Positions 1 to 47,673 of a stretch of DNA of 64,000 nt are shown here, one piece after another. The first letter of the stretch is position 1. The number at the start of each line of letters is the position of its first letter. Made by a program: the position numbers and the translations under genes. The stretch lies in the IMG/VR virus record IMGVR_UViG_3300023174_000038, positions 284,702-348,701 of that record; one strand, written 5' to 3'. Below the pieces are notes generated by a model that was not told where the DNA came from, did not search any database, and saw only the letters and a program-made list of their open reading frames with translations.

Positions 1-271
1 TGGTTATTGCCGTATTACCGGTAGAATACCCGTATCCAAAAATAGCTTTATCTGTACCGTAACCTGCGGCTGCAAGTTGATATCTAGCAGTGCCCACACC
101 AGTTGTATCTGTAGCAACTACACCCGCACTTGTTACTAGGTTGGTTATTGCTGTTACACCTACCCCACCAATGTATCCATATCCAAATATAGCTTTATTA
201 CCGCCTGGAGGTGGTGTAATAGCCCATCCTCCGCCATTTAATGTTATTCCACCTGTAATTGTTATTGACAT
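1..271 (-). CDS. Gly-rich repeat (Kelch/beta-propeller-like) protein, 5' part, runs off window
   Basis: Not in ORF track; hand translation from ATG at 271: MSITITGGITLNGGGWAITPPPGGNKAIFGYG...GTDKAIFGYG; N-terminus matches the 45943..46890 protein. Confidence 0.8.
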   Translation of the reverse strand, partial: MSITITGGITLNGGGWAITPPPGGNKAIFGYGYIGGVGVTAITNLVTSAGVVATDTTGVGTARYQLAAAGYGTDKAIFGYGYSTGNTAIT

Positions 272-1235: not shown

Positions 1236-1269
1236 ATTAGTATTTATGCTCACTTTTGATTTCACAGTA

Positions 1270-1338: not shown

Positions 1339-2151
1339 TTAATCATTCGTCTTACATTTAGCACGTTTAGCATTGGTTAATGCTCCGTAATCTACTGGCC
1401 ATTCTTTACCAGGCTGTAACTCTTTAGCGTTTGCAGGGAAATGGTACTTTACACCTGCATATTCTTGTATCTGTGCTAATGGAGCACGAAACTGTGTCAA
1501 ATCATTACCCAAATTAACATATGGTTTCTTATGTGGGAACTGCCATCCAGCAACTTCATGTGTAACATTGTTAATAACAATCTTGTAGTAACCATGAGGA
1601 ACAACTACACCATTACCAATCTTTTCATTACCTGTACCATAATATGCACCTACATAAATTGTGAATGGTTGTTTTAGTTGTACTGCCCATCCACGTATAC
1701 TTGTTTCTAATAGTTTCCATATGCCACGATTCAATGAACCATGTTGAGGATACATATTAGTCATTAAAAAACTTTCATATTCTACTTGTTGTGTCCAAGA
1801 TAGATCACCATCTGGTGCAGCATGACCTTTGTCATAACCCGTAGCTACATAATCATCAGGCTTTGCACCATCTTTAATACTAGCATCAGCAACAAAAGCG
1901 TTTGTTCTTGGGAAACAACCTAAAGCATTTTCTGGCTTAAGAGTGTATGCTACATATACTGGTATCTTTGCTGGCGAATCATATGCTACAAGATATGCTT
2001 CACGACATATTGGTTGTGATGGTCTTGCTGTTTGTGCAAATCCGTACGGACTATGTATTTGACATTGTTGTACTGGTAAGGGAGCACGTTGATCCCATGC
2101 AAATATATTTGTTGATATTAGTACTGTTGCTATTGCTATTATTTTTTTCAT
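1339..2151 (-). CDS. DNA/RNA non-specific endonuclease (NucA/EndoG family) with signal peptide
   Basis: YDKGHAAP (DRGH-type) and TNMYPQ..LNRGIWKLLE motifs; N-terminal MKKIIAIATVLISTNIFA. Confidence 0.9.
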   Translation of the reverse strand: MKKIIAIATVLISTNIFAWDQRAPLPVQQCQIHSPYGFAQTARPSQPICREAYLVAYDSPAKIPVYVAYTLKPENALGCFPRTNAFVADASIKDGAKPDDYVATGYDKGHAAPDGDLSWTQQVEYESFLMTNMYPQHGSLNRGIWKLLETSIRGWAVQLKQPFTIYVGAYYGTGNEKIGNGVVVPHGYYKIVINNVTHEVAGWQFPHKKPYVNLGNDLTQFRAPLAQIQEYAGVKYHFPANAKELQPGKEWPVDYGALTNAKRAKCKTND

Positions 2152-35396: not shown

Positions 35397-35466
35397 AGGT
35401 ATCCTTTTTCTTATATATATTTATCTATTTATGATTTTTATTTGCATTTCGTAAAATGCTTGAGAG

Positions 35467-36420
35467 TTATTGACTGCCTGAAGTTGCCGCTAAATATCTT
35501 CCGGCAGCTGCTAATGGACCCCTAGCTGTAGCGGTAGCAGTATCAGTTGCATATGTAATACGGTTTACTGTAGATAATGCACCACCTAAATATCCTCCTC
35601 CGTTCCATCCATAATTAGCATCGGTCATTGCCGCTCCGGATTGTATTACTGTAATTGGTAATGGACCGCGTACACTAGCAGTAACAAGATCATTTGCATA
35701 TGTAATGCGTTGTATTGTACTAGATGGATTATTTGTAGCATCATATCCGCCTATTATCCAACCGTTAGTTGTATTACCGGTTCCCGATGTAAAGTATGTT
35801 CCGGTGTTTAATGGACCACGTGCTGATGCAGTATTTGTATCAGTTGCGTATGTAATTCGATCTATTACAGTGGTCATTGGAAAACCTTGATAACCTCCTC
35901 CAAACCATCCATAAGTAGTACCATCTGATGATGCGGCTAACCCCCTTCTTGTTAAACTTAATGGTCCACGTACACTTGCAGTTGCTGTATCTGTTGCAAA
36001 TGTAATTCTATCTACAGTTGATACCGCTGGGTAGGCCTGACCACCAGCAAACCAACCGGCTGTTGTAGTACCAGTCGCCCCATATTGACTTCTAGCTAAA
36101 CTTAGCGGCCCGCGAATGCTTGCAGTAGCCGTGTCAGTTGCATATGTGATACGTTGTACCGTTGTTGAACTGGTTGTAGAGCCAAACCATCCGTCAGTAA
36201 AATTACCAGTGCCGGCTGCTGACAATGTGTTTTGACTTAGTACTCCTCGTAAACTTGCAGTAGCAGTATCAGTTGCAAAAGTTATACGTTGAATAGAACT
36301 CATAGCACTAGAACCAAAACCGCCTGCTGCCCAGCCTGCAGTGTTTGTTGACGGCGGTGCCAATGTAGCTGTAAACCCACCACCGGTAAATGTAAATGCT
36401 CCACTAAATGTTACTGACAT
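35467..36420 (-). CDS. Six-repeat Kelch/beta-propeller-like protein
   Basis: Six units GW..GG-loop-(D/Q)RIT(F/Y)ATDTATAS.RGPL. Confidence 0.8.
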   Translation of the reverse strand: MSVTFSGAFTFTGGGFTATLAPPSTNTAGWAAGGFGSSAMSSIQRITFATDTATASLRGVLSQNTLSAAGTGNFTDGWFGSTTSSTTVQRITYATDTATASIRGPLSLARSQYGATGTTTAGWFAGGQAYPAVSTVDRITFATDTATASVRGPLSLTRRGLAASSDGTTYGWFGGGYQGFPMTTVIDRITYATDTNTASARGPLNTGTYFTSGTGNTTNGWIIGGYDATNNPSSTIQRITYANDLVTASVRGPLPITVIQSGAAMTDANYGWNGGGYLGGALSTVNRITYATDTATATARGPLAAAGRYLAATSGSQ

Positions 36421-36438
36421 ATTTTTATTCCCATATCA

Positions 36439-36924
36439 TTATTTATCTGACGGTTCTTTACTGGCCAACATCTTAAGCAACTCGTTGCGGTCTAAAGCTT
36501 TACCCTCACCAACTGGCGTGTTCTCTATCTCTTCGGCTTTTCCAGCCAACTTCTGGTCTAACTGTGCTTTCTTAAGCTGTAAATCAATCATCTTTAACTT
36601 CTTATTCAATTTAGCAGTCTTTGCTGTAATAGCATGACCTAACATGTTACTAGCAACACTAAAAATCTCACTACTAAATCTACTATCAACTTGCATACCC
36701 AAATCACTTAAATCTTTAAAACTATCTACAGCCATCTGCGCTAATTCATCTAACTCATTATCACTAGCATCTAATCCACGTACTTGTGGCAATGCATTAT
36801 CAATCTTCTCTAACGCACTTAATGCATCAGTGGTTATATCACGTGCATTTTCTGGTATAGGAATATGCAAGCTGTCAATCTCATCTTGCGGTAGCTCAAA
36901 TAATTCGTTTAATTTTTTCGTCAT
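36439..36924 (-). CDS. Hypothetical helical protein, possibly terminase small subunit-like
   Basis: 161 aa helical/coiled-coil; position near head-completion gene; weak resemblance only. Confidence 0.45.
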
Positions 36925-37586
36925 ATGTTATTTATTCGGTCTCTGTTATCCAAAATGTATTTTACCCTATCCCATGAGATTTGAAGTTTAATAGATATCT
37001 GTCTAATATTTGTACCACTATCAGCTAATTCAAACACTTGAGGGAATAAGTGTTTGTTCTTGTCAATATATGTTGTAACCATCTGTTCTCTTTTTTCATC
37101 AGACCAGGTAGATCCTTTTCTATTTTCTGCAGCCTTCAAGCAATTATTAAGTCTATTTTCTAGTGCCTTTTCAGACCAAACTTTGTATTCTGTTTGGTAT
37201 ATTTTAATTTTTTCTTTAGTGGACTCTTTACGTTTTATACCAGTACGTTGCTCGGTAAATAATTTTTTAGTATGTTCATAATGTTTAAATCCAGATACTC
37301 CTTCTCCACCATCGGTTCTATTTTGTAGTATACCGGTATTATTATTCTTTCTACCATACCATTTAATCATCCTTCGTTCTATTGCAAATGCACCTATTTC
37401 TGTTAAACCGGATTCTAATATAATAATCCTAGACGTGTCTTTTGGAGTTTTAAATCGTTCAGTATTTGCGTGACCCCACGCTCTATATCCGTGTCCTTTA
37501 CCGATGTAATACGGTGTGTTATCTTTCCGTAGATAGGCATATACATAAAACCCCGCAGGATATAATTTTTTATAATAAATAGTCAT
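36921..37586 (-). CDS. Free-standing GIY-YIG homing endonuclease (HEG3)
   Basis: [21 protein letters not shown]....I...[11 protein letters not shown]. Confidence 0.85.
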
Positions 37587-37652
37587 GCTGACATTCCCTT
37601 ACAATGTTAGAGTAGTTGGGGTTCCGACGCCCGCGAACTACACTTTTATTTA
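37584..37652 (-). promoter_or_regulatory. Late promoter plus conserved structured HEG leader (copy 2)
   Basis: TAAATA-AAAGT-GTAGTT-CGC-GGG/CCC-C-AACTAC-TCTA-ACATT..AAGGG-AATGT-CAGC-ATG. Confidence 0.8.
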
Positions 37653-38096
37653 TCTTTTGTTCTTTGGATTACCATTGTGGAAGATATCATCTTCCGTCAA
37701 CACTCTAAAGGTATATCCATGATGCTTACAATAGGCCATTGCAGCTTGCCATTTAGCATGGTTGATTGCTACTACCATTCTATCTTTAGCATTAGCAACT
37801 TTACTTTCTATAAGACTTTGTTTCTTGGGTTTAATCTCAACTATCTCAGCAATATTTTTACCATACTTGTTTTGATAAACTACAAAGAAGTCTGGGATAT
37901 ATGTTTTTGGTTGTCCAGTAAACGGATTACGATAAGGTACACTTATTGCTTCACTAGCCCAATACAATACGTTTTTGTTAGTATCACAAAAATTCATAAA
38001 TGTTAGTTCCCATCCACTACGATATCTAGGGGTATGTTTACCTACATATTTTTGACTATTCTTTGGGGTAAATAAACCTTGAGCAAACTTTGCCAT
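37650..38096 (-). CDS. Head completion nuclease (T4 gp4-like, TnsA-type PD-(D/E)xK)
   Basis: F.PKN..KYVG...YRSGWE..FM.FCD....WASE; YIPDF; EIKP. Confidence 0.85.
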   Translation of the reverse strand: MAKFAQGLFTPKNSQKYVGKHTPRYRSGWELTFMNFCDTNKNVLYWASEAISVPYRNPFTGQPKTYIPDFFVVYQNKYGKNIAEIVEIKPKKQSLIESKVANAKDRMVVAINHAKWQAAMAYCKHHGYTFRVLTEDDIFHNGNPKNKR

Positions 38097-38098
38097 GA

Positions 38099-38461
38099 TT
38101 ATTGCACGATATTACGTGCTACGGGTTGATTAGATTGTGGTACTGTGCTTACACCATACAAACTTGTTTTAGATTTAAAACTGTTTAGATAGTATGATAT
38201 AACTTGATTCATTTGTAGTTTAGTACCAGTACCTTGAATTTGTGCTAATAAATCTAGTACAGGGATACCTGTTTCTTGTGATATTCTGAATAGAAATGCG
38301 GTAAAATTTCCTGCGATAACTTTAGTATCGCATACAGATTTAAAATAGCCATTGACAATATCAAATTCATTACCGTTTACTGTCATATTAAATGAGTAGA
38401 AATCGTCAAATATTTTAACTGTTAAGTCAGTTGCTGTTCGGTCGTCTATAATTCTTGCCAT
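38099..38461 (-). CDS. Hypothetical protein in tail module
   Basis: 120 aa. Confidence 0.6.
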   Translation of the reverse strand: MARIIDDRTATDLTVKIFDDFYSFNMTVNGNEFDIVNGYFKSVCDTKVIAGNFTAFLFRISQETGIPVLDLLAQIQGTGTKLQMNQVISYYLNSFKSKTSLYGVSTVPQSNQPVARNIVQ

Positions 38462-38464
38462 AAG

Positions 38465-39655
38465 TTATGCTCCTGTACTATTTATATCAGGGGGAACTAC
38501 AGCTCTACCATTAGCTTGTTGATACTGATTTGGTGTAGAACCAAATATAGGTAAATTAAATAATACATTTCTACCAGTATTGTTTAATGGATTCATAATA
38601 GCATTAGTAATACCAGCAGTTACTTCACTTCTAATAGCTTGTTTTAGATTTATATTTTTAAGAGTATTATATGTAGCACCGGCTTTTTGTATAGCACCTA
38701 GTATATTTGTATTTTCACCAGATAAGTCATCAATTACACCATTGACACCGTCTACTAAACCGCCTTGACCCAATATACTAGCTTGACTACCCGGTCTAGT
38801 AATAGGACTGGCAACTCTATCATAGTGTTCGCTTAATCCAAATCCGGCAACAATATTACTAGGTTCCTTACCACTAATAGCACCCTGAAAATACTTAACA
38901 GTTTCATAGTCCAATGTCATTGTATTTTCCATAGTACCATTACCTTCTGCATAATTGTATGTATCATGTGCAAATCTATTAATTATAGGATTAATTAATG
39001 TATAAGCCGCATAGTTATGTTGATTAAAACCAAATATTGTGATATTTTTAAAAAATGGAATTTTTGTTTGACCATTACTAGCTTGAATGCTATTTGCAGG
39101 AGTATCAGGTGTTTCTCCTATATAGCCCCAATTTGTATCACCAGTAATAGATTGTGAATAAATGTTTCTTAAATTGTAATTTGCATTATTAGGACTATTA
39201 GTACTACCATTACCTGTTTGTTGTGCTTGACGACCAGAAACAGAAGCTACAGGAATACTAGCATCTTTATAATAATATGTATAGTAGTTATACCACATAT
39301 TACGTATTAGATTTCCATTATCGTCATGGAAGTTAATATCTATTGGATCGTATTTAATTTTTGTTTGCACGATACGTTTACGATTATATTGATTCATCGT
39401 ATGTGTATCAAAACTATAGCTTGGTAACTTAACAGATTTAACAGCTAGACCAAAATTTGCACCTTGTGGTAATCCTACTGCATATGCACTTTGATTGATT
39501 TCAAAATACACATGGAATAGGAACTTAAATTTAGGTGCATATTGATATGCATTAGGTCTGAATGTCTTACTAGCATGAGTATAATCACGAAGGTAGTCGT
39601 TGCCAAAGAATCCATTGGCAGCGTCTGTTACTAAGTTTTGAAAGAAACCAGCCAT
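38465..39655 (-). CDS. Tail-tube-fold baseplate hub/tube initiator (gp48/gp54-like)
   Basis: PKFKFLFHV.F, VKLPSYSFDT..MNQYNRKRIVQTKI.YDPI...FHDD; next to tube gene. Confidence 0.7.
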   Translation of the reverse strand: MAGFFQNLVTDAANGFFGNDYLRDYTHASKTFRPNAYQYAPKFKFLFHVYFEINQSAYAVGLPQGANFGLAVKSVKLPSYSFDTHTMNQYNRKRIVQTKIKYDPIDINFHDDNGNLIRNMWYNYYTYYYKDASIPVASVSGRQAQQTGNGSTNSPNNANYNLRNIYSQSITGDTNWGYIGETPDTPANSIQASNGQTKIPFFKNITIFGFNQHNYAAYTLINPIINRFAHDTYNYAEGNGTMENTMTLDYETVKYFQGAISGKEPSNIVAGFGLSEHYDRVASPITRPGSQASILGQGGLVDGVNGVIDDLSGENTNILGAIQKAGATYNTLKNINLKQAIRSEVTAGITNAIMNPLNNTGRNVLFNLPIFGSTPNQYQQANGRAVVPPDINSTGA

Positions 39656-39673
39656 TTAATATATTAAAATATA

Positions 39674-40312
39674 TTAAGCTTGACCGGCACCAATACCCGT
39701 TGTTGATGTACCACCTAAAGCACGACCAACACTTGTGCCAACACCAGAACTCAACGGTGATTGAACCGCATTGTCAAAGCGAATTGATAATTGTATTGTT
39801 ACAACTTCATTAGAGCTATAAGCCAAATTATTGTAATTTGCTGCCTGCAAGAAACAACCATATACTTCCCAAGTTTCTAGTACGACCGGAGTAGCAGTAC
39901 CGTTACCACCGTCTAAGATTTCAATATTTGTTTGAAATTTATAGTCTTGACCAGTTGCGGCTGAAGCTTGTTCAACAAAGTCCATTTGCTTCTGTAATTG
40001 TTGACCAACTAATGCTGAAACACTACCTGAAGCATCATCTCTAACATTAACAGTTAGTGGTTGCCATTCGTGTCTGCCTGCCAAATACATAGTAGAGTTA
40101 TAAACTGGGATATTAATTTCACCAAAACTAACTGATGGGCGTGTTACATCAATAACTTGCTTTGTTAATTCATTAGTAGCGTTATTAGTACCAAAGTTTA
40201 GAAAATTAACTCTAAAACGATATTGTAGTTTGGGCATTAGCAAGCCCTGATTTCCGCCTGCGTTGTCTGACGCTACGGTCATGTTAAACAATGATTGTGA
40301 GGCTATTGCCAT
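39674..40312 (-). CDS. Tail tube protein (gp19-like)
   Basis: PKLQYRFRV, RPSVSF.EI, W.PLTVNVRDD, ETWEVYGCF, I.LSIRFDNA. Confidence 0.85.
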   Translation of the reverse strand: MAIASQSLFNMTVASDNAGGNQGLLMPKLQYRFRVNFLNFGTNNATNELTKQVIDVTRPSVSFGEINIPVYNSTMYLAGRHEWQPLTVNVRDDASGSVSALVGQQLQKQMDFVEQASAATGQDYKFQTNIEILDGGNGTATPVVLETWEVYGCFLQAANYNNLAYSSNEVVTIQLSIRFDNAVQSPLSSGVGTSVGRALGGTSTTGIGAGQA

Positions 40313-40349
40313 GTTTTTCTCCTGTTATTAATATTTATCTATTTAAATA

Positions 40350-40369
40350 GATACCCCTCTCGGGGTATC
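40350..40369 (-). terminator. Terminator-like hairpin after sheath gene
   Basis: GATACCCC-GAGA-GGGGTATC on minus strand. Confidence 0.65.
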
Positions 40370-40377
40370 ATATTTTA

Positions 40378-43300
40378 TTATTGTCCACCAAGCTCGCCTG
40401 TGTTCAATATACGAACTGGGATATAGATGAATTCAGCTGCCTTAACAGGCTCTACTGCAACGTCAATCCACAATTCATTTCTATCAATTCTTGCTGGCGT
40501 GTTGTTACTTTCGTCACACACTACAAGATAATCATATAGACCGCGTTTAGCAACTAAATCAACCATCAATGTTTGTACAACACCTGCAATTTGATTACGT
40601 GTTAGTGCATCGTTAGGTTCAAATACAAACGGTCTTGCCGCTAATGTTAATTGTCTACGTATATACGCAACTAAACGAGCAACGTTAGTTCTGTCTAATG
40701 CACTTGAACTATTAAAACTAGTTTTGTTACCATAATTCAATAAACCAACACCAGTAAAGAATACTAATGGATTAATGAAATTTATATACAATACATCACG
40801 TATACCTAAACGTGTTTTGATAGATTGCCACTCACCTGTTGTAGCGTCAACATAACCAATGCTTAATGCATTGTCAATTGTACCACGACGAGTACCTGCT
40901 GCCGCTAACCAAGGATAACTAATAGTATCATTACGCAAGAATGTACGCAACATCATATATGATGGGGGTACTGCAACTTGATTACCTTGTAAGTCAGTTG
41001 CTAATCCACTTGGATAGAATAGACCCATGTATGTATCACGGTTAACTAAACCTTCTTCACCTGTACTTGATGCACCTGCTTCGTTATTAGCCCATGCTTG
41101 AATTGCAGTAGCACTATCCGGTAAACGCATTGGTGTATCACCTAAGATATAACCAGTTTGACCGCGGTCATTATTCAATGTAATCATACCGGGCTGTAGT
41201 TCTGGATAGTTAGGTGTTGCAATCAAGTTGAAGAAATTATCTTCATCACGTATTGCTGTGTTAGTAGCAATTGCCGCATTCAATGATTGAACAACCATTG
41301 CACGTTGTGCCTTACGACCCATATATGGTGCACCGTTTGTTTGATTACCACTAACTGTTACCCAAGTACTAGTATATGTAGGTAATGTGTCATCTGGGAA
41401 ACTTGTACTGTTGAAGTAATCAACCATATACTGTTTTACATTATAACCATTACGGCGTGTGTTGAACAACAACATACCAGATGGATATAGTGTTGGATCC
41501 GGAGCATCTAAATCAAGATTGTTACTAGTTAACAAACTAACGATTGTTGGGATAGGATCATCAACTGGACTAATAGTATTTTGATTACTTGACCAACGTG
41601 CATCAGCAAATACTACACCAGTGCTACTTGTTTGGTCTGTGTTATCAATCAATACCCATTGATCGGTACCACTAACACTTTGCCAACGATTAATTACTGG
41701 ATAATTTTCTAAATCACTAGTATCGATCCATAAATCACCGTATACTAATGCGGTAGTACCGTCACTTTGTGTTGTTGGTGCAGTTGCACTAATTAATGGT
41801 CCATTAGGATCAGTTTCATTAGTTCCACTTGGAAGAGGGAAACCACTACTGTCATAATCTCTATTGCCATAACCATACCAAGCACCAGAGAAGTTAATCA
41901 TAATATCAACCTGGTCAACTACTGAGTAGTACCAATTTGTATCATTAGCAGGAGCAACTGCAGGTTGTCCTTCATTAGAAATATATGTAAATTCAACCCA
42001 GTTACTTAACTGTGTTCTATACTTAGCAGTGGGTAAACCTAAACTATATGTAATTGCAGTAGCTACACCACCTGATACGGCTGTCACTTCAACAATCAAA
42101 TCATTAGTTATTGATGTTCCACCTAAATCAGCACCGTCAATTGTAATTAAATCACCAACTGTATAACCACTACCGCCAGCATTTACACCTGCACCATTTA
42201 TAATGTAAGCACCACTGGATACAATAATGTTAAAAGTAGCATTAGCACCTGGGCTAGATGTACCAGATACACCTGTAAATACGCTTGTTACAAAAGGACC
42301 AAATTTTACACCAGATGTTGTACCAATTACAAATCCAGCTGTTTCAATTAATCCATTAGATACACCTGTTGATAGATATGAGGAATTTACAGTATCATCT
42401 AATATAATTGTACCACCCTCAGTGTGTGATAATTGTATAGCACCGTCACTTGTTACACTTGCCGTTGTGTAGGGGATATTGGCCGCTGCCCAAGCAGTTA
42501 CAAAATTTGTAGCGGTAGTGTTATCTGCTAATGTAAAGGGATATGCAGAACTCAATGTGCTACTTCCAGGAACACTTACATATACATTCATATAGTATCT
42601 ACCAGAATTAAATTCAGGATCAGTAACATCACCTGTTACAATAGTTGCACCTGTAGCAATTCTTTCCCAAATATAAATTGGGACAGCAGATCCCGTACCA
42701 TTAAAGCCATACTGTGCATATACAGTATTTGCCGGAATAGCTTGTCCGCCAGTTGCATCTATACCTGCTGATGCAGCCCAATCACTTTCATATAATGAAA
42801 CATTTTTATTTAACCAAGTTTGAGTTACTCCATTAAACTCTGCCATTATAGGATCTAATCCAGTGCCAGCAGAACCTACTTTAATCCAAACACTGCCTGT
42901 TGGACGAGGAGCTGATTGACTTGAAGTCCATAATGGCATTTGAGCACTTGTTCCATATTGTGATAAAGGTTGATAATATGTAGATTGTACACTTACATTT
43001 ATACCCATAGTTGCTAATGGAGTACCAGTTCCTTCTGCTAAAACCAATCTTCCGTTTGAACTACCGGCTGACAATACTTGGCTAGAAAAAATACATAACT
43101 TACCACTACGTACTGATGCTGATAGATATGGCCAATCTAAAGCATTAATAACTCCGGCCACACCTGCTACCGTATTATTCGGTGATGCTGGAACTGAAAT
43201 TGTTGCTGTAACACCTGCCAACCCAGATAGATTTATAGTAAATGTATTTCCTGCAACTAATGTAGGATTAGAAACTGATCCCTGTACTGTAGGAATATCT

Positions 43301-43965
43301 CTTTGCCAAGCAGGTGTACCTACTGCGACCCATGTATTAGATGTGGTTTTATAATAATATGTTTTATATGTTGATGCAGGTGTTTCATTAATCTGTATTG
43401 CATTTATAGCATAATCACCAATGTTACCTATACTACTTAATGGAACCCCTGCTGATAAATCACTAGCCATTGTTATAACAATAGGATTTTGTAAAGTGAA
43501 TTGGCCAGTTGTTTGATTAAACTCATATATACCCCATGTGCTTGTTGTAGTATCTAACCACCATGTACCAGCATCTGGATTACCAGTTGGACGACCAGTT
43601 TGACCAACTAAACTAGCTAGGTCAATGTCTGCACGTAAAACATAACAACGGTTTGTTACACCTAATGTACTATAGGCTGCTAACAATCCATATTCATTTA
43701 ACTCATAACCTTGAATTGGTGTACCATTTGCTGTTGTATAAAAGAATGGACTACCATACAAGTTTACCAAATCTCGTTGACTTGTTACTTGGAATAACTT
43801 ATTTGCGTTAGCGGCCGTTGTTGCGGCTGCTACACCTGTTCCAGATGCATCAGCTTTGTTTTGCGCTGTTGCTAATAGAATAAGTGGGACTGAATTCGTT
43901 GGGGCTGGAAGATATTGACTCTGGTCAATGATCGTTACTTCTACGCCTGGAGATGTTAATGCCAT
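40378..43965 (-). CDS. Contractile tail sheath protein (gp18-like) with insertion domains
   Basis: L.SPGVEVT.IDQS start; PWLAAAG..RG, INP, LDRTNVARL, FVFEPND, CDESNNT...IDRNELW.DVAVEPVK.AEFIYIP. Confidence 0.93.
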   Translation of the reverse strand: MALTSPGVEVTIIDQSQYLPAPTNSVPLILLATAQNKADASGTGVAAATTAANANKLFQVTSQRDLVNLYGSPFFYTTANGTPIQGYELNEYGLLAAYSTLGVTNRCYVLRADIDLASLVGQTGRPTGNPDAGTWWLDTTTSTWGIYEFNQTTGQFTLQNPIVITMASDLSAGVPLSSIGNIGDYAINAIQINETPASTYKTYYYKTTSNTWVAVGTPAWQRDIPTVQGSVSNPTLVAGNTFTINLSGLAGVTATISVPASPNNTVAGVAGVINALDWPYLSASVRSGKLCIFSSQVLSAGSSNGRLVLAEGTGTPLATMGINVSVQSTYYQPLSQYGTSAQMPLWTSSQSAPRPTGSVWIKVGSAGTGLDPIMAEFNGVTQTWLNKNVSLYESDWAASAGIDATGGQAIPANTVYAQYGFNGTGSAVPIYIWERIATGATIVTGDVTDPEFNSGRYYMNVYVSVPGSSTLSSAYPFTLADNTTATNFVTAWAAANIPYTTASVTSDGAIQLSHTEGGTIILDDTVNSSYLSTGVSNGLIETAGFVIGTTSGVKFGPFVTSVFTGVSGTSSPGANATFNIIVSSGAYIINGAGVNAGGSGYTVGDLITIDGADLGGTSITNDLIVEVTAVSGGVATAITYSLGLPTAKYRTQLSNWVEFTYISNEGQPAVAPANDTNWYYSVVDQVDIMINFSGAWYGYGNRDYDSSGFPLPSGTNETDPNGPLISATAPTTQSDGTTALVYGDLWIDTSDLENYPVINRWQSVSGTDQWVLIDNTDQTSSTGVVFADARWSSNQNTISPVDDPIPTIVSLLTSNNLDLDAPDPTLYPSGMLLFNTRRNGYNVKQYMVDYFNSTSFPDDTLPTYTSTWVTVSGNQTNGAPYMGRKAQRAMVVQSLNAAIATNTAIRDEDNFFNLIATPNYPELQPGMITLNNDRGQTGYILGDTPMRLPDSATAIQAWANNEAGASSTGEEGLVNRDTYMGLFYPSGLATDLQGNQVAVPPSYMMLRTFLRNDTISYPWLAAAGTRRGTIDNALSIGYVDATTGEWQSIKTRLGIRDVLYINFINPLVFFTGVGLLNYGNKTSFNSSSALDRTNVARLVAYIRRQLTLAARPFVFEPNDALTRNQIAGVVQTLMVDLVAKRGLYDYLVVCDESNNTPARIDRNELWIDVAVEPVKAAEFIYIPVRILNTGELGGQ

Positions 43966-44085
43966 TTTATGTTTCCTTTATGTAAAATTTTAAGGTTTAC
44001 TACCTGTTTGCATACTAATATTTATCAAATACCTTTAAAAAGACATACTTACCGTGCCTTTAAAGGTTCCTAGAGTAAATACACA

Positions 44086-44430
44086 ATGAGACCTATATGC
44101 AATACTTGTGGAAAGAATCACTGTGCCGTTAACTATAAACGGCTAGGAGTAACACACTATAGAAGCATGTGCGATGAGTGTGGACGAAAGAAAAATAAAC
44201 TTAAACCCAGAACTCCTAAATGGAAAAGTAAAGGTTATAAGAAAAAAACCGCATGTGATTTATGCGGCTTTAAGGGTTTATTTACTAGTCAAATCACCGT
44301 CTTTCATATTGACGGTAATTTAGAAAACACTGATTTGGTTAACTTGCGTAGTATATGTCTTAACTGTGTAGAAGTAGTTAAAAAGAAAGAAGTTAATTGG
44401 AAACGAGGGGACTTACAGGTTGACCACTGA
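44086..44430 (+). CDS. Small HNH/zinc-finger protein
   Basis: CxxC pairs and HIDGNLEN...NLRSIC.NC. Confidence 0.7.
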   Translation: MRPICNTCGKNHCAVNYKRLGVTHYRSMCDECGRKKNKLKPRTPKWKSKGYKKKTACDLCGFKGLFTSQITVFHIDGNLENTDLVNLRSICLNCVEVVKKKEVNWKRGDLQVDH

Positions 44431-45045
44431 GTTAACTTGTTTATGTAACTCATCAATTGATCCATTGTTATCAATATAATAGTCATACAACAATCCTACA
44501 CTACTATACTCACTAGCGTGTACGGCATAGTTACCTAACTCTACCATAGCTTTTAATCTTTGTTCACTACCTTCAGGCTCATTATTATAGTCTACTGCGG
44601 CACTATACCATATAGGACGTTCACCCCTGCTTACACGCATTGTGATACCACCTACACTTTTGATAGAATTAACTTCATTAGCAAAACGGCAATCGGTAAT
44701 AACAATGTTTTCATCTGTTTGGCGTAGCTTATTTTCTACACTAGCTACCCAAATATCTTTATGAAACCCATTACGACATACTTCTGTACCCCAGTATTGT
44801 AATACCCATCTTGGAGTAATATCCATTCCTAATCGTTCACTCCACCATTCATCACGTTGTTCACGCCAAGCTCTACTGGTTTTAGTAGAACCTTCTAAGT
44901 ATTCTCTATTCCAACCAAATACTGCGGCTACTGCGTCTTTTAAACTTGCCGCAAAACTAACACGTTTGAACCCGTGAAATGTAGTAAGATAGTTTGCAAT
45001 AGTGTCCTTGCCCGAACCGATTTGGCCAGTGATTCCTATTATCAT
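44413..45045 (-). CDS. Deoxynucleoside monophosphate kinase (T4 gp1-like)
   Basis: Likely start MIIGITGQIGSGKDT; SFAASLKD, R.VLQYWGTE, ITDCRF.NE, HASE. Confidence 0.9.
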   Translation of the reverse strand: MIIGITGQIGSGKDTIANYLTTFHGFKRVSFAASLKDAVAAVFGWNREYLEGSTKTSRAWREQRDEWWSERLGMDITPRWVLQYWGTEVCRNGFHKDIWVASVENKLRQTDENIVITDCRFANEVNSIKSVGGITMRVSRGERPIWYSAAVDYNNEPEGSEQRLKAMVELGNYAVHASEYSSVGLLYDYYIDNNGSIDELHKQVNSVVNL

Positions 45046-45049
45046 ATGG

Positions 45050-45097
45050 TAACTCCTGTAATACATTTATTATACTACAGGAGAGTTGTAAAGTAAA
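45050..45097 (-). promoter_or_regulatory. Sigma70-type promoter inside an RBS-occluding hairpin
   Basis: TTTACT-17-TATAAT; stem CTCCTGTAGTA/TATTACAGGAG covers the SD. Confidence 0.7.
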
Positions 45098-45106
45098 GTG
45101 TTTAGG

Positions 45107-45904
45107 TTAACCTTGCACCCATGTCAAGGGTTGTGATCCATCTACATACCGTTTTAGTTCTTCAATGAGTTCTTGCTGTAGTTGTTTAGATTCTGCTTTC
45201 ATTGCCGCACCATTTAAACTTGTGCCGCCACCCGGACCTGCAATACTAGCAAACTTCTCACGTGCTTCACCAATAATACCTTTTAATACAGCAAATACCC
45301 AATCACCAATCCAAACACCAGTGCTTGGATCTTGTAATAATACTTCTTGTGTTCTTTGTACATCTGCCCAAATTAATATACGTTCACCGGATCCTTTTGG
45401 ATCACGAACAATACGTAATACTTTGGTTACTGGATCAAATGTATAAACAACATATCCACCAAACATACGTGCGGCTAATTCAACATAACCAGCATAAAAG
45501 TCATATGTTGCCATACCACCAGCATAGTTATAGTTTAGCAAATATGTGTTTAGAATAGCTGAACTGAATGGGTCAAAACTACTACTTGAAGGGCCTGTTT
45601 CTAGTCCAACTGTTCTACGATATAAACATCTGACGTTAATGAATTCTTGTGGTAGTGTATATGTATCAACATTCTTTTCTATTGTGAAAAGAGTATAAGA
45701 TTCTGCCGTAGCATTTTGCGCTCGTTGACGATAGACTTTGATAGCATAGTTGTATGCTGCCTCATAGTGTTGAGGATCTAATTCCAAATCAATGATACCA
45801 TCTCCTAGACGATATCTAACGTTTTGGAATAATGCTTGTTTTAGTTCATCTAGTGTTAGACCAGATGGAGTAGATAGTATATTTGCAGTAGCTGATATTG
45901 TCAT
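45107..45904 (-). CDS. Neck/head-tail adaptor protein (gp13-like)
   Basis: RLGDGIIDLELDPQHYE, G..GE.R.KF..I.GP.GGT.LNG..MK.E, PL.WV.G. Confidence 0.8.
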   Translation of the reverse strand: MTISATANILSTPSGLTLDELKQALFQNVRYRLGDGIIDLELDPQHYEAAYNYAIKVYRQRAQNATAESYTLFTIEKNVDTYTLPQEFINVRCLYRRTVGLETGPSSSSFDPFSSAILNTYLLNYNYAGGMATYDFYAGYVELAARMFGGYVVYTFDPVTKVLRIVRDPKGSGERILIWADVQRTQEVLLQDPSTGVWIGDWVFAVLKGIIGEAREKFASIAGPGGGTSLNGAAMKAESKQLQQELIEELKRYVDGSQPLTWVQG

Positions 45905-45942
45905 AGTTGTTTACCTGTATGTTGTATTTAATGTAAAAATTC

Positions 45943-46890
45943 TTATGGTGTGCCACCGGTTGCTCCCAGCTGTGTAGCTTGAACAGTCATAGGTCCACGT
46001 GTTGTTGCAGTAGCAGTATCAGTTGCATAAATTATCCGCTGTGTTGTGGCTTGATTAGATCCGTATACCCATCCATAACTAGTATCACCGGTACCACATA
46101 TATACGGTGCAGGATTGGCCAACGGGCCTCTAATGCTAGCGGTTGCTGTATCCGTTGCATATGTTATTCTTTCAACCATGCTAGAATTGTAATTTCCTCC
46201 AAAAAACCAGCCATACGTAGAATTATCAGTAGTTGCGGCAAGGGCATATCTTACACCACTAAGTGGACCACGTGTACTTGCGGTAGCAGTATCTGTTGCA
46301 TAGGTGATACGAGAGACTTTAGATTGGGATACACCACCGGCAAACCAGCCGGATGTACTAAGCCCGGTTGCGGCATTCCACTGCACAGCAAAACTTAATG
46401 GGCCACGTGTGGTTGCATTAGCAGTATCTGTTGCGTATGTAGTTCTGTCTACGGTTGATATGGTTCCGGGACCAATTGGGTAATTATATCCGCCACCCCA
46501 CCAGCCATATGTAGCACCATCTGTGGAGGCGGCCAACTGTCTTACTCCACCGGATAATGATCCTCTAAGGCTGGCTGTTGCAGTATCAGTTGAAAAAGTA
46601 ACTCTTTGAACCGCAGAGATAATAGAAGATTGAAAGCTTGATTGCTGTCCTCCTCCCCACCATCCATATGTTAAAGTGCCTGCGGCTGTTAGCTGTCTTG
46701 CTATAAGGGATAATGGGCCCCGTATTGAGCTAGAGGCAGTATCTGTTGCAAAAGTTATACGCTGTACGGTGGATATAGAACCATATCCGCCACCCCACCA
46801 ACCTGCAGTAGCGGTGGACGGAGGTGCCGGAGGTGCTACTATACCCACTCCACCACTAAATGAAATTCCACCTGTTATCGTTATTGACAT
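45943..46890 (-). CDS. Six-repeat Kelch/beta-propeller-like protein (paralogue)
   Basis: Six GW..GG...RIT(F/Y)ATDTATAS.RGPL units; visibly more GC-rich than flanks. Confidence 0.8.
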   Translation of the reverse strand: MSITITGGISFSGGVGIVAPPAPPSTATAGWWGGGYGSISTVQRITFATDTASSSIRGPLSLIARQLTAAGTLTYGWWGGGQQSSFQSSIISAVQRVTFSTDTATASLRGSLSGGVRQLAASTDGATYGWWGGGYNYPIGPGTISTVDRTTYATDTANATTRGPLSFAVQWNAATGLSTSGWFAGGVSQSKVSRITYATDTATASTRGPLSGVRYALAATTDNSTYGWFFGGNYNSSMVERITYATDTATASIRGPLANPAPYICGTGDTSYGWVYGSNQATTQRIIYATDTATATTRGPMTVQATQLGATGGTP

Positions 46891-46941
46891 AATTGTTACC
46901 CTTAAATACGTATATTGTATTTATCGGGCAACAATTATTAC

Positions 46942-47604
46942 TTACAAATCGCCTTCTTTACGATTCTCACTATAATATGCATCAAAACTACCAATATCTT
47001 TCATTTTACAATTATTTCCGTGCCATCTTACGTAATTACCTTTAGAAATAATTTTATCGCAATATTCACACGTAATCTGATACTCAGGTTTACACATTGG
47101 ATTGTTACTACCGGTCTTTAATGCATTTAATTTTGAAAGTTTTGGATTTTTCTTTCCGCGCATTGCACTTACTTTTCCAAACATTGGATTTTTATTACCA
47201 ACATTAGCAGAATTTCTAGCACTAAGTTGCGGATTCTTTTTTCCATACATGGGATGTTTATCACCAGCCCTGAGTGAGTTTCTTTCTCCTACTGTAGTAT
47301 TTTTTCTTCCGTAACAAGGATGATTCTCACCTCTATCCGAACCACCTGTTTCAGGTATCTTGTTTGCCCACTCATTACTTTTAACAATATTCCACAGTGT
47401 ACTGTAGTATCTCCCCCAAATACTCAATTCTTCTTTAGAGTGACATTCCCTAATAATTTCAGTATCAATGAATTTACCAAACTCTTTTAAATGAGATTTC
47501 CATTCTAATCCTGAACCCAAATATTTGTAGGGATCTTTAGTTGTTTTGCCGAGATATTTAATCCCAGTAACTTGGTGGGTCTTTTTGTATAGATAAATAA
47601 TCAT
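46942..47604 (-). CDS. Free-standing GIY-YIG (Seg-like) homing endonuclease (HEG4)
   Basis: IYLYKKTHQVTGIKYLGKT..YLGSG..WK.HL; ANKIPETGG; NUMOD3-like G..(H/N)PM(Y/F)GK repeats; C-terminal CEYC. Confidence 0.85.
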   Translation of the reverse strand: MIIYLYKKTHQVTGIKYLGKTTKDPYKYLGSGLEWKSHLKEFGKFIDTEIIRECHSKEELSIWGRYYSTLWNIVKSNEWANKIPETGGSDRGENHPCYGRKNTTVGERNSLRAGDKHPMYGKKNPQLSARNSANVGNKNPMFGKVSAMRGKKNPKLSKLNALKTGSNNPMCKPEYQITCEYCDKIISKGNYVRWHGNNCKMKDIGSFDAYYSENRKEGDL

Positions 47605-47671
47605 GCTGATTGCTCCTTCAAAGCATTAGAGTAACTGGGAAGTCTAATTCCGCGAGTTACACTATTATTTA
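47602..47671 (-). promoter_or_regulatory. Late promoter plus conserved structured HEG leader (copy 3)
   Basis: TAAATA-ATAGT-GTAACT-CGC-GGAA/TTCC-C-AGTTAC-TCTAA-TGCT..AAGG-AGCA-ATCAGC-ATG. Confidence 0.8.
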
Positions 47672-47673
47672 TC

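What the first reader, a model, noticed from the sequence alone, without database searches (positions are those of the whole stretch)
35467..46890. Dispersed family of six-bladed repeat proteins with a shared N-terminal tag and variable loops
Seen: 35467-36420, 45943-46890 and the partial gene at 1-271 start MS(I/V)T(I/F)(T/S)G(G/A)..(F/L).GG...PP. The two complete ones have six near-identical blades (RIT(F/Y)ATDTATAS.RGPL), while the loop after each GG varies in length and sequence (QAYPAV, YQGFPMT, YDATNNPS, QQSSFQSSII, YNYPIGPGT). Each has its own TAAATA upstream and sits as a cassette near a HEG. Inference: interchangeable receptor-binding or adhesion heads docked on the virion by a common N-terminal strand, diversified on one face.
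Basis: partly seen in the sequence, partly recalled or inferred. Interest (0 to 1): 0.6.

Follow-up and report, generated by a model that had tools for sequence, protein, structure and literature searches.

The report
Hypervariable Kelch propeller family in jumbo phage
An uncultured 349-kb freshwater jumbo phage carries twelve copies of a small six-bladed Kelch propeller protein whose ligand-binding face changes very fast while the rest stays fixed, most likely a set of exchangeable adhesion heads on the virus particle, although presence in the particle is not yet shown.

Summary
The window is the last 64 kb of a 348,701-bp IMG/VR jumbo myophage. That genome holds 10 full-length paralogues, a 76-aa one-blade ORF, and one sister-subfamily gene whose first 90 codons are window 2-271.

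- **Fold:** both subfamilies model as closed six-bladed Kelch propellers (pLDDT 93 and 80; TM 0.72-0.80 to Keap1/KLHL12).
- **N-terminal tag:** residues 1-27 lie outside the propeller.
- **Variation:** Together these form the canonical Kelch substrate face. The other face is near invariant.
- **Rate of change:** in a close relative the flanking enzymes are 90-97% identical, while the syntenic Kelch genes are 45-63% identical and their loops 21-23%.
- **Cassette behaviour:** relatives carry two copies, one copy, or none at the window 45943-46890 slot.
- **Mechanism of variation:** the genome has no reverse transcriptase, so this is not a DGR.
- **Expression signal:** the cassettes share a GATAAATA promoter-like motif with the tail sheath and tube genes.
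- **Fusions:** homologues are fused to tail-fibre anchor modules (Mtd_N, TIG, fn3, Laminin_G).

Best reading: virion-displayed, exchangeable binding heads. Virion location and target are inferred, not shown.

The parts
45943..46890 (-). Kelch-type six-bladed propeller paralogue (315 aa): 27-aa N-terminal tag plus six blades. It is closed by its C-terminal strand.
   Evidence: ORF. AF2 model pLDDT 93, pTM 0.90. Foldseek TM 0.76-0.80 to Keap1/KLHL12/SAKe Kelch domains. PHROG 19111 E 3e-28.
46918..46925 (-). GATAAATA promoter-like motif, 27 nt upstream of the ATG of 45943-46890.
   Evidence: The same motif precedes the tail sheath and tail tube genes. In a Kelch-less strain variant it would sit about 18 nt before the gp13-like gene.
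35467..36420 (-). Kelch-type six-bladed propeller paralogue (317 aa) with the same N-terminal tag.
   Evidence: ORF. 48% identical to 45943-46890. PHROG 19111 E 2.8e-22. Member of alignments A1 and A2.
36440..36447 (-). GATAAATA promoter-like motif, 19 nt upstream of the ATG of 35467-36420.
2..271 (-). First 90 codons of a 310-aa sister-subfamily Kelch propeller (whole gene is genome 284040-284972). It has the same N-terminal tag and a different blade motif.
   Evidence: AF2 model pLDDT 80, Foldseek TM 0.72-0.77 to KLHL17/KLHL12/Keap1. hhalign to the main family gives probability 86%.
46942..47604 (-). Homing-endonuclease-like gene (NUMOD3 motifs). It occupies the slot where a relative has a second Kelch paralogue.
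   Evidence: Pfam NUMOD3. PHROG endonuclease hits. Synteny with L025.
36921..37586 (-). Homing-endonuclease-like gene, GIY-YIG-like by eye. It lies one ORF upstream of the 35467-36420 cassette.
   Evidence: A YIG motif is visible in the sequence. PHROG 314 'homing endonuclease' E 6.7e-4 and PHROG 15526. No Pfam hit.
45107..45904 (-). T4 gp13-like neck / head-tail adaptor gene, immediately downstream of the Kelch cassette. By my recollection this is the position that wac (fibritin) holds in T4.
   Evidence: PHROG 211 'head-tail adaptor Ad2' E 8.6e-25. PF26809 Phage_T4_gp13 is on record for the 97%-identical orthologue.
40378..43965 (-). Tail sheath gene (context). It shares the GATAAATA upstream motif, at 44019-44026.
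   Evidence: tblastn to annotated sheath genes. Motif positions.

Best explanation
The genes encode stand-alone six-bladed Kelch-type beta-propellers that act as exchangeable binding heads displayed on the virion.

**Proposed architecture.** Each protein is a 27-residue N-terminal tag followed by a propeller. The tag lies outside the fold. The propeller's upper face is built from six BC loops (2-16 residues) and six DA loops (6 residues) and is hypervariable. The lower face (CD loops A-T-D-T-A-T, AB loops) is conserved, and by strand topology both chain termini lie on that side.

**Proposed mechanism.** The genes are transcribed late from a GATAAATA promoter together with the tail genes. The conserved tag and lower face dock the propeller non-covalently onto a common virion site, probably a fibre, the neck or the tail surface. 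The variable face points outward and binds host-surface or environmental ligands. Twelve paralogues would give one particle population a repertoire of specificities. Recombination, gain and loss of whole cassettes, and fast loop evolution would reshuffle that repertoire between strains.

**Shown:** fold, position of the variability, rate contrast with neighbouring genes, cassette gain and loss, modular N-terminus, promoter motif shared with tail genes, phage-restricted distribution.

**Inferred:** late expression, virion incorporation, docking through the tag, and the nature of the ligand.
For: **Fold**
- AF2 pLDDT 93 / pTM 0.90. There are six four-stranded blades, and the C-terminal strand closes blade I.
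- Foldseek TM 0.76-0.80 to Keap1, KLHL12 and designed SAKe Kelch proteins. The sister subfamily gives the same result.
- The A2 profile hits the consensus-designed Kelch SAKe6FR at E 5.9e-8.

**Variable face**
- Across 92 sequences, entropy is 2.49 bits in BC loops and 2.74 in DA loops. It is 0.58-0.93 bits in the B, C and D strands and the CD loop.
- BC and DA loops define the Kelch substrate pocket on the upper face (PMC3597819).

**Selection**
- In the orthologue pair at 80% identity, dN/dS is 0.92 in DA loops, 0.25 in BC loops and 0-0.28 elsewhere. The tag shows no amino-acid change.
- In relative L017 the flanking enzymes are 90-97% identical, and the six syntenic Kelch genes are 45-63% identical. 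By site class, identity is BC 21%, DA 23%, CD 82%, tag 77%.
- The tree is star-like with tips of 0.6-1.6 substitutions per site.

**Cassette behaviour**
- L025 has a second paralogue where the window has a HEG.
- One lake-metagenome contig joins 45912 to 46912, skipping the gene but keeping the promoter.

**Virion link**
- GATAAATA also precedes the sheath and tube genes. 34 of the 46 genomic copies lie within 70 nt upstream of a gene.
- The genes sit beside gp13-like, sheath and tube genes and beside fibre-like giant genes.
- P0017 combines a fibre-like N-terminus, a TIG domain and the propeller.
- 76 of the 120 best sister-family hits have N-terminal extensions of 60 aa or more, including Mtd_N, Laminin_G_3 and fn3.

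**Distribution**
- 272 matches in IMG/VR, against 5 MAG contigs among 185,579 species genomes.

**Precedent**
- phiKZ gp298 is a Kelch protein present at low copy in the virion and is required for adsorption to particular strains (PMC12676376).
- CBB_552 is a Kelch protein found in virions by mass spectrometry (PMC5259590).
Against: - There is no proteomic, imaging or expression evidence for this phage or its close relatives. No RNA run holds the locus.
- The docking partner is unknown. The one complex test, with the adjacent gp13-like protein, gave no verdict.
- The seven loci share no common neighbour, and some lie next to non-structural genes such as a PP-loop ATPase, a sigma-like factor and modification enzymes.
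- Assigning loops to faces rests on strand topology and the Kelch literature. I could not measure it on model coordinates.
- The dN/dS values come from one pair and small site classes.
- The framework itself is also more diverged than the flanking genes (66-82% against 90-97%). Allele replacement by recombination, rather than in-place positive selection, may explain part of the contrast.
Confidence: 0.5

Rival explanations
1. The propellers act inside the infected cell as binders: anti-defence or host-takeover factors. Like poxvirus Kelch proteins, they would use the hypervariable Kelch face to capture fast-evolving host proteins, and would not be part of the particle.
For: - The canonical protein-binding face is the hypervariable one.
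- The family has many paralogues, evolves very fast and is gained and lost between strains, as expected in an arms race.
- Several copies lie next to non-structural genes.
- There is no direct virion evidence.
Against: - There is no BTB or other effector domain; each protein is only a tag plus a propeller.
- The promoter-like motif is shared with the sheath and tube genes.
- Homologues are fused to tail-fibre anchor modules with the propeller in the distal position.
- Copies are embedded in the neck/tail and giant-fibre gene blocks.
Confidence: 0.15
2. They are capsid or tail decoration proteins, comparable to Hoc or to the 'hairs' of phage CBB. They would bind environmental polymers or give weak, reversible first contact with surfaces, and would not determine host range.
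For: - The evidence for virion display listed under the best explanation applies equally here.
- The CBB Kelch protein is in the virion of a phage with hair-like tail appendages.
- The cassette is dispensable in a natural variant.
- The pseudo-sixfold conserved face could sit on a sixfold site (inference).
Against: - Decoration proteins that bind generic polymers are not expected to randomise their binding loops between strains that are 90-97% identical elsewhere.
- phiKZ gp298 shows strain-specific adsorption.
Confidence: 0.15
3. The propellers are the substrates, or the carriers, of the co-encoded modification enzymes: a TPST-like sulfotransferase, an APS kinase, a GT4 glycosyltransferase and 2OG-Fe oxygenases. 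The conserved Thr/Ser/Tyr-rich lower face would be sulfated or glycosylated, and the modified protein would be the functional entity. Alternatively, they are lectins for a sulfated glycan.
For: - Six of the paralogues are interleaved with these enzymes, and the order is conserved in L017.
- The S-SKS1 homologue lies next to a sulfotransferase that is 37% identical to this phage's enzyme (E 2e-67).
- 16 of 79 family loci have this sulfotransferase within 6 kb (loci not de-replicated).
- The best solved-structure match of the sulfotransferase is protein-tyrosine sulfotransferase 1, weakly (E 1e-4).
Against: - Half of the paralogues, including both complete window genes, are far from the enzyme cluster.
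- The TPST match is weak.
- No acidic sulfation motif is evident.
- The enzymes could act on other virion proteins or on host envelope glycans.
- This reading is compatible with the best explanation rather than exclusive of it.
Confidence: 0.1
4. A diversity-generating retroelement mutates the loops.
For: The only support is the localised hypervariability.
Against: - The complete 348.7-kb genome has no RVT_1 match, while the control genomes do.
- Variation includes loop-length changes of 2-16 residues, which DGRs do not make.
- No template repeat was seen.
Confidence: 0.02

Closest known systems
phiKZ gp298 (Kelch-domain, low-copy virion protein needed for adsorption to certain Pseudomonas strains; PMC12676376)
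   Same: Both are stand-alone Kelch propellers of about 300-335 aa in a jumbo phage. gp298 is dispensable on some hosts, and here a natural variant lacks the cassette. Its role as a strain-specific adsorption factor is the one proposed here.
   Different: gp298 is a single gene, not a 12-member repertoire. It carries a predicted N-acetylneuraminate epimerase signature that is not detected here (Pfam gave no hit). No shared N-terminal tag is described for it. I did not test sequence homology because no gp298 sequence was on hand; only fold-level matches to phiKZ-like Kelch proteins were seen.
Kelch-like proteins of phage vB_PcaM_CBB (CBB_550/552/554; CBB_552 found in virions; PMC5259590)
   Same: Several Kelch propeller genes sit in a small cluster of a ~350-kb myophage, and at least one product is in the particle. 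The fold matches (BFVD TM 0.55-0.62).
   Different: The CBB proteins match Pfam/InterPro Kelch models; this family does not. No hypervariable face, common tag or large metagenomic family is reported for them.
Kelch domains of Keap1/KLHL substrate adaptors
   Same: Both are six-bladed propellers closed by a C-terminal strand, with a GG doublet before the BC loop. In both, the BC and DA loops form the ligand face. BC loop lengths are similar: median 9-10 here, about 12 in KLHL proteins.
   Different: There are no BTB/BACK domains and no Cul3 context. Sequence identity is 13-16%. The blades here are far more regular, closer to the designed SAKe proteins. Pfam Kelch models do not match.
DGR-diversified receptor-binding proteins (Bordetella phage Mtd and relatives)
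   Same: Both show localised hypervariability of a binding surface on a conserved scaffold. Some sister-family homologues carry the Mtd_N anchor domain.
   Different: The scaffold differs: a Kelch propeller here, a C-type lectin fold in Mtd. There is no reverse transcriptase. Diversity here comes from paralogy, recombination and ordinary substitution and indel, not mutagenic retrohoming.
T4 fibritin (wac) and Hoc
   Same: By my recollection, the gene slot immediately upstream of gp13 is where T4 has wac. All three are dispensable accessory virion proteins with an N-terminal anchor and an outward-facing part.
   Different: There is no coiled coil or foldon and no Ig domains. The resemblance is positional and conceptual only.

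Membership tests
Kelch-repeat beta-propeller superfamily | Closed propeller of (usually six) four-stranded antiparallel blades | tested here: met
   AF2 models reach pLDDT 93 and 80, each with six sets of four strands. Foldseek TM is 0.72-0.80 to Keap1, KLHL12 and KLHL17, with E down to 1e-18.
Kelch-repeat beta-propeller superfamily | Ring closure by a C-terminal strand that supplies strand A of blade I | tested here: met
   In the strand order of the model, the last strand (309-313) follows strand D of blade VI, and the first strand (29-33) is a B strand. This was read from the secondary-structure string, not from coordinates.
Kelch-repeat beta-propeller superfamily | Sequence signature: GG doublet at the end of strand B, plus conserved aromatic and Arg positions in each repeat | tested here: inconclusive
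   A G-W-x-G-G(G) motif is present in every blade, and an Arg is common in the DA loop. The usual Tyr/Trp positions are replaced by the R-I-T-Y-A-T-D-T / R-G-P-L motifs.
Kelch-repeat beta-propeller superfamily | Match to curated Kelch sequence models (Pfam Kelch_1-6) | tested here: not met
   No Kelch model matched at E up to 1. The family profile does hit the consensus-designed Kelch SAKe6FR at E 5.9e-8.
BTB-Kelch substrate adaptors (KLHL, poxvirus Kelch) | N-terminal BTB and BACK domains | tested here: not met
   Only 27 residues precede the propeller, and there is no Pfam hit.
DGR target proteins | Cognate reverse transcriptase and a template/variable repeat pair in the same genome | tested here: not met
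   PF00078 has no match in the complete genome, while the controls are positive.
Phage receptor-binding / tail-fibre distal domains | Present in the virion and required for adsorption | not testable with these tools
   The phage is uncultured, no proteome exists, and no RNA run holds the locus.
Phage receptor-binding / tail-fibre distal domains | The domain is found C-terminal to tail-fibre anchor modules in homologues | tested here: met
   P0017 has a fibre-like N-terminus and a TIG domain. In the sister family, P0122 has Mtd_N, P0124 and P0125 have Laminin_G_3, and P0207 has fn3. 76 of 120 sister-family hits carry extensions of 60 aa or more.
Phage receptor-binding / tail-fibre distal domains | Much faster divergence than neighbouring genes between close relatives | tested here: met
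   The Kelch genes are 45-63% identical against 90-97% for the flanking genes. At the window locus the Kelch gene is 78-80% identical, against 93-97% for the gp13-like, DNMK and orf396 genes. The sheath (81%), tube and MazG (86%) are nearly as diverged there.
PHROG 19111 (unknown function) | Significant match to the family profile | tested here: met
   E 3e-28 and 2.8e-22 for the two window proteins. The sister-subfamily protein has no PHROG match.

The most novel reading that the evidence does not exclude
Phages of this freshwater group use the Kelch propeller somewhat as vertebrates use the immunoglobulin fold. It would be a rigid scaffold with twelve hypervariable loops on one face, encoded as a multigene repertoire that is reshuffled by cassette gain, loss and recombination. 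Each head would plug into the virion through a universal 27-residue N-terminal tag and an invariant lower face. That lower face may additionally be modified by a co-inherited TPST-like sulfotransferase / PAPS / glycosyltransferase module. If true, this would be a non-DGR, non-fibre route to multivalent host recognition, and possibly the first phage structural protein family with dedicated tyrosine sulfation.
Probability: 0.2. Interest if true: 0.8.

Novelty: new variant of a known kind. Interest (0 to 1): 0.6.

Why it matters
Kelch propellers have been noted in a few jumbo phages, and one (phiKZ gp298) was recently tied to strain-specific adsorption. Here the same fold appears as a large, phage-restricted family that Pfam does not recognise.

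- **Scale:** it has thousands of environmental members and up to a dozen copies per genome, about 3% of this genome.
- **Design:** the split between a fixed docking side and a randomised binding side is unusually clean.
- **Use as a marker:** the loops are the fastest-changing part of genomes that are otherwise 90-97% identical, so they are natural markers for host-range microdiversity in lake viromes.
- **Use as a tool:** the regular scaffold resembles designed Kelch proteins and could serve as an engineerable binder. Fluorescent versions could be used to fish out the unknown hosts.
- **Testable side lead:** the repeated linkage to a TPST-like sulfotransferase points to post-translational sulfation in phage particles, which can be tested directly.

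Tried and rejected
- **DGR:** searched the complete genome for RVT_1 and found nothing. Rejected.
- **Pfam on the three proteins:** nothing meaningful.
- **Isolated phages:** a megablast of the 14-kb region against isolated phages found no match. A tblastn of the protein found only Synechococcus phage S-SKS1.
- **Complex prediction:** Kelch protein 45943-46890 with the adjacent gp13-like protein gave no verdict (score 0.00, controls not run). This counts neither for nor against binding.
- **N-terminal tag as closure strand:** I considered that the tag was simply the propeller's 'velcro' strand. Rejected, because closure is by the C-terminal strand and residues 1-27 have low confidence and lie outside the fold.
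- **Enzyme role (NanM or galactose-oxidase-like):** rejected as unlikely, because the only pocket-forming face is hypervariable.
- **Expression:** I looked for RNA evidence, but no RNA run holds the locus.
- **Cellular origin:** only 5 MAG contigs among 185,579 species genomes carry the family. These are likely binned phage DNA.
- **Concerted evolution within the genome:** the tree shows paralogues of the different phages intermixed on long tips, not clustered by genome.
- **Not used:** the big representative-protein search (search of protein representatives), because the word search and the fold answered the question.

Full report
**Where the window lies.** The window is bases 284,702-348,701 of a single 348,701-bp IMG/VR virus record. 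CheckV rates the record complete. Its 1195-aa tail sheath is 45-47% identical to those of Agrobacterium phage Atu_ph07, Sinorhizobium phage Phosso and the PA5oct group. The genes around the finding are:
- two tail-tube paralogues;
- a T4 gp13-like neck protein (PHROG 211, E 8.6e-25; PF26809 is on record for its 97%-identical orthologue);
- a dNMP kinase and a MazG protein;
- several homing-endonuclease-like genes.

Near-identical DNA occurs in lake and freshwater metagenomes from about a dozen studies. The organism is therefore an uncultured freshwater jumbo myophage, distantly T4-like.

**Checking the observation.**
- Both complete ORFs and the open-ended ORF at 2-271 are present as described.
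- The two complete proteins are 48% identical.
- They show six repeats with the R-I-T-(Y/F)-A-T-D-T-A-T-A-S-x-R-G-P-L core, preceded by G-W-x-G-G and a loop of variable length.
- All three start with the same MS(I/V)T(I/F)(T/S)GG...GGG...PP tag.

The genome has ten full-length paralogues of 312-337 aa:
- a tandem pair at 156.6-158.6 kb;
- a tandem quartet at 161.6-165.4 kb;
- singles at 119.0, 282.1, 320.2 and 330.6 kb.

It also has a 76-aa ORF made of the tag, one blade and the C-terminal strand (281,806-282,036). Finally there is the 310-aa gene whose 5' end is window 2-271. That last gene belongs to a sister subfamily with a different blade motif. Profile comparison links the two at 86% probability, driven largely by the shared tag.

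**Fold.** I modelled the 45943-46890 protein with an alignment of 92 family members. The model has pLDDT 93 and pTM 0.90, with six blades of four strands.
- The best PDB matches are all six-bladed Kelch domains: designed SAKe proteins, KLHL12 and Keap1, at TM 0.76-0.80 and E down to 1e-18.
- The sister protein folds the same way (pLDDT 80; TM 0.72-0.77 to KLHL17, KLHL12 and Keap1).
- At sequence level, Pfam's Kelch models do not match. The family profile does find the consensus-designed Kelch SAKe6FR at E 5.9e-8.
- The first modelled strand (29-33, the G-W-x-G-G strand) is a B strand. The last strand (309-313) follows strand D of blade VI, so it supplies strand A of blade I. This is the usual Kelch closure.
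They are not the closure strand.

**Where the variation is.** I labelled every residue of the reference by structural element and measured column entropy over the 92 sequences.

| Element | Entropy (bits) | Note |
|---|---|---|
| BC loop (after GG) | 2.49 | length 2-16 residues |
| DA loop (after R-G-P-L) | 2.74 | fixed at about 6 residues |
| B strand | 0.84 | |
| C strand | 0.93 | |
| CD loop | 0.58 | |
| D strand | 0.76 | |
| Tag | 1.46 | |

In Kelch domains the inter-blade DA loops and the protruding BC loops together shape the substrate pocket on the upper face (Canning et al. 2013, PMC3597819). By strand order, the CD and AB loops and both chain termini fall on the opposite face. This assignment rests on topology and the literature. 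I could not measure it on coordinates.

**Rate and mode of change.** Three comparisons bear on this.

1. A JGI contig (L017) carries the same gene order as genome 153.9-166.7 kb. Its enzymes and small ORFs are 90-97% identical in protein to those of this genome. The six syntenic Kelch genes are only 45-63% identical. By site class, the pooled identity of those pairs is:

| Tag | B | BC | C | CD | D | DA |
|---|---|---|---|---|---|---|
| 77% | 69% | 21% | 66% | 82% | 73% | 23% |

2. A relative of the window locus (L023/L025) has an orthologue of 45943-46890 at 80% identity over the full length (tblastn local alignment 78%).
   - Neighbouring genes there: gp13-like 97%, dNMP kinase 93%, orf396 93%. 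The sheath (81%), tube (86%) and MazG (86%) are nearly as diverged as the Kelch gene.
   - Nei-Gojobori dN/dS for that pair is 0.92 in DA loops (23 of 36 residues changed), 0.25 in BC loops and 0-0.28 elsewhere.
   - The 28 tag codons show no amino-acid change.
   - This is one pair with small classes, so it is indicative only.
3. A maximum-likelihood tree of 19 paralogues from three phages is star-like, with terminal branches of 0.6-1.6 substitutions per site. Only a few positional orthologue pairs are recovered, and there is no clustering by genome. This argues against concerted evolution. It fits very fast divergence, or replacement by distant alleles.

**Cassette behaviour.**
- In L025 the slot held here by the NUMOD3 endonuclease gene (46942-47604) holds a second Kelch paralogue of 333 aa.
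- In one lake metagenome, a contig about 95% identical on its left side joins 45912 directly to 46912 with four other letters between. The whole Kelch gene is missing. The GATAAATA motif at 46918-46925 remains and would then sit about 18 nt before the gp13-like start.
- This locus therefore exists with two, one or no Kelch genes.
- The 76-aa one-blade ORF looks like the product of recombination between blade repeats.
- The complete genome has no reverse transcriptase. Together with the loop-length variation, this rules out a DGR.

**Expression signal.**
- The two complete window genes, and the first gene of each tandem block elsewhere, have GATAAATA 19-32 nt upstream of the ATG.
- The same octamer precedes the tail sheath, the tail tube and the two endonuclease genes.
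- Genome-wide there are 46 copies. By my own base-composition estimate, about 41 would be expected by chance, so the total is unremarkable.
- However, 34 of the 46 lie within 70 nt upstream of a called gene in the right orientation, whereas I estimate roughly two would do so by chance.
- The motif is one base away from the T4 late promoter TATAAATA (my own knowledge of T4). Late co-expression with tail genes is therefore a reasonable inference, not a demonstration.
- The partial gene at 2-271 has no such motif and abuts the upstream gene.

**Links to the particle.** The copy at 118,991 shares its start with the stop of a 350-aa gene and precedes a 2753-aa gene. Like the 1142-aa and 4990-aa ORFs in the same region, both of these begin with similar fibre-like N-termini. 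The largest Kelch block follows the 4990-aa gene, after a 71-aa and a 1288-aa ORF and four small genes.

More telling are the fusions in homologues:
- P0017 joins a fibre-like N-terminus and an IPT/TIG domain to the main-family propeller.
- Other main-family members replace the tag with a different ~50-aa N-terminal module.
- Among the 120 best sister-family hits, 76 have N-terminal extensions of 60 aa or more. Detected domains include Mtd_N (the anchor domain of the Bordetella phage tropism determinant), Laminin_G_3 and fn3.

In every case the propeller sits at the distal, C-terminal position. The short tag is carried by at least 87 of the 120 best main-family hits. The family is essentially phage-restricted: 272 matches in IMG/VR, against five MAG contigs among 185,579 species genomes.

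**Precedent in the literature.**
- CBB_552, a Kelch-like protein of the 356-kb phage CBB, was found in virions by mass spectrometry (PMC5259590).
- phiKZ gp298 is a Kelch-domain protein of about 335 aa (a 1,008-bp gene). It is a low-abundance virion protein that is dispensable on PAO1 but required for adsorption to two other strains (PMC12676376).
- BFVD fold matches include Kelch proteins of BcepSaruman, PS119XW, CBB, PhiPA3 and Noxifer, some annotated as virion structural proteins.
- My searches of the held library found nothing describing this sequence family, its tag or its hypervariable face.

**Interpretation.** The best-supported reading is a repertoire of virion-displayed binding heads. 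A fixed tag and fixed lower face would do the docking. A randomised Kelch binding face would recognise ligands. The genes would be expressed late and reshuffled between strains by cassette turnover.

I put this at about 0.5, because virion location, partner and ligand are all inferred. The one complex test, against the adjacent gp13-like protein, returned no verdict and is not evidence either way. The rivals are:
- intracellular anti-defence binders;
- generic decoration proteins;
- substrates or lectins tied to the neighbouring modification enzymes.

**A side lead.** Six paralogues are interleaved with five enzyme genes:
- a DUF6445 protein;
- a sulfotransferase;
- a GT4 glycosyltransferase;
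- a 2OG-Fe(II) oxygenase;
- an APS-kinase-like protein.

The order is conserved in L017. The only isolated phage with a family member is the 208-kb Synechococcus phage S-SKS1 (genus Llyrvirus). Its homologue sits next to a sulfotransferase that is 37% identical to this phage's enzyme (E 2e-67). Of 79 family loci, 16 have this sulfotransferase within 6 kb; the loci are not de-replicated. Its best match among solved structures is protein-tyrosine sulfotransferase 1, weakly (E 1e-4). Whether the propellers are modified is open and testable.

**Verdict.** The finding is a new variant of a known kind: Kelch propellers as accessory virion or adsorption proteins of jumbo phages. What is unusual is its copy number, the clean two-faced conservation pattern, the shared tag and the linkage to sulfation genes.

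Noticed in passing
L004:1211-1441 (-) = genome 281,806-282,036, outside the window: A 76-aa ORF consists of the N-terminal tag, exactly one Kelch blade and the conserved C-terminal strand ending S-G-I-Q. It has its own ribosome-binding-like site. It looks like an in-frame collapse between blade repeats, and it is a natural single-blade protein that might oligomerise.
   Followed up: partly
L021:4953-17260 = genome 153,953-166,260: Six Kelch paralogues are interleaved with DUF6445, a sulfotransferase (best PDB match is protein-tyrosine sulfotransferase 1, E 1e-4), a GT4 glycosyltransferase, a 2OG-Fe(II) oxygenase and an APS-kinase-like gene. The same order occurs in L017. A homologous sulfotransferase also sits next to the family member of Synechococcus phage S-SKS1.
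   Followed up: partly
window 45913-46911: One lake-metagenome contig (run X9, depth 12) joins 45912 to 46912 with four other letters between. This strain variant lacks the whole Kelch gene but keeps the GATAAATA motif in front of the gp13-like gene.
   Followed up: partly
window 37587-37654 (-) and 47605-47673 (-): The two homing-endonuclease-like genes have related 60-nt leaders that start at GATAAATA. Both fold into the same two hairpins, with compensatory changes in the first stem (GUAGUU/AACUAC against GUAACU/AGUUAC). The second hairpin covers the ribosome-binding site. The energy z-scores are only -0.6 and -2.0.
   Followed up: partly
whole genome; window 35418-35425, 36440-36447, 37647-37654, 40332-40339, 44019-44026, 46918-46925, 47666-47673 (-): GATAAATA differs by one base from the T4 late promoter. 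It occurs 46 times in the genome, and 34 of those copies lie within 70 nt upstream of a gene, including the sheath and tube genes. It is probably this phage's late promoter.
   Followed up: partly
window 282-1265 (-): A 327-aa protein has a clear sigma-70 region 4 (E 8e-19) followed by a C-terminal part containing an H-E-x-x-H motif. This is an unusual combination. It lies directly upstream of the sister-subfamily Kelch gene.
   Followed up: no
window 1339-2151 (-): A 270-aa DNA/RNA non-specific endonuclease (PF01223, E 1e-36) begins with what looks like a signal peptide.
   Followed up: no
window 38465-39655 (-) and 39674-40312 (-): Two adjacent tail-tube-like genes of 396 and 212 aa both match PHROG 4542. 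The longer one carries a large insertion.
   Followed up: no
window 40378-43965 (-): The tail sheath is 1195 aa. Only about 57-62% of it aligns, in two pieces, to the sheaths of Atu_ph07 and PA5oct-type phages, so it carries a large lineage-specific insertion. It is also only 81% identical to the sheath of the close relative L025.
   Followed up: no
L022 and L021 = genome 109,150-153,913: A run of very large genes (1091, 662, 1142, 350, 2753, 4990 and 1288 aa). Several of them (1142, 350, 2753 and 4990 aa) begin with similar N-termini, and none has an informative Pfam match. One Kelch paralogue that lacks the tag starts at the stop of the 350-aa gene.
   Followed up: partly
window 37650-38096 (-) and 44086-44430 (+): A TnsA-like endonuclease and an HNH endonuclease lie among the tail genes. 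With the two HEG-like genes, that makes four nuclease-type mobile-element genes within 11 kb of structural genes.
   Followed up: no
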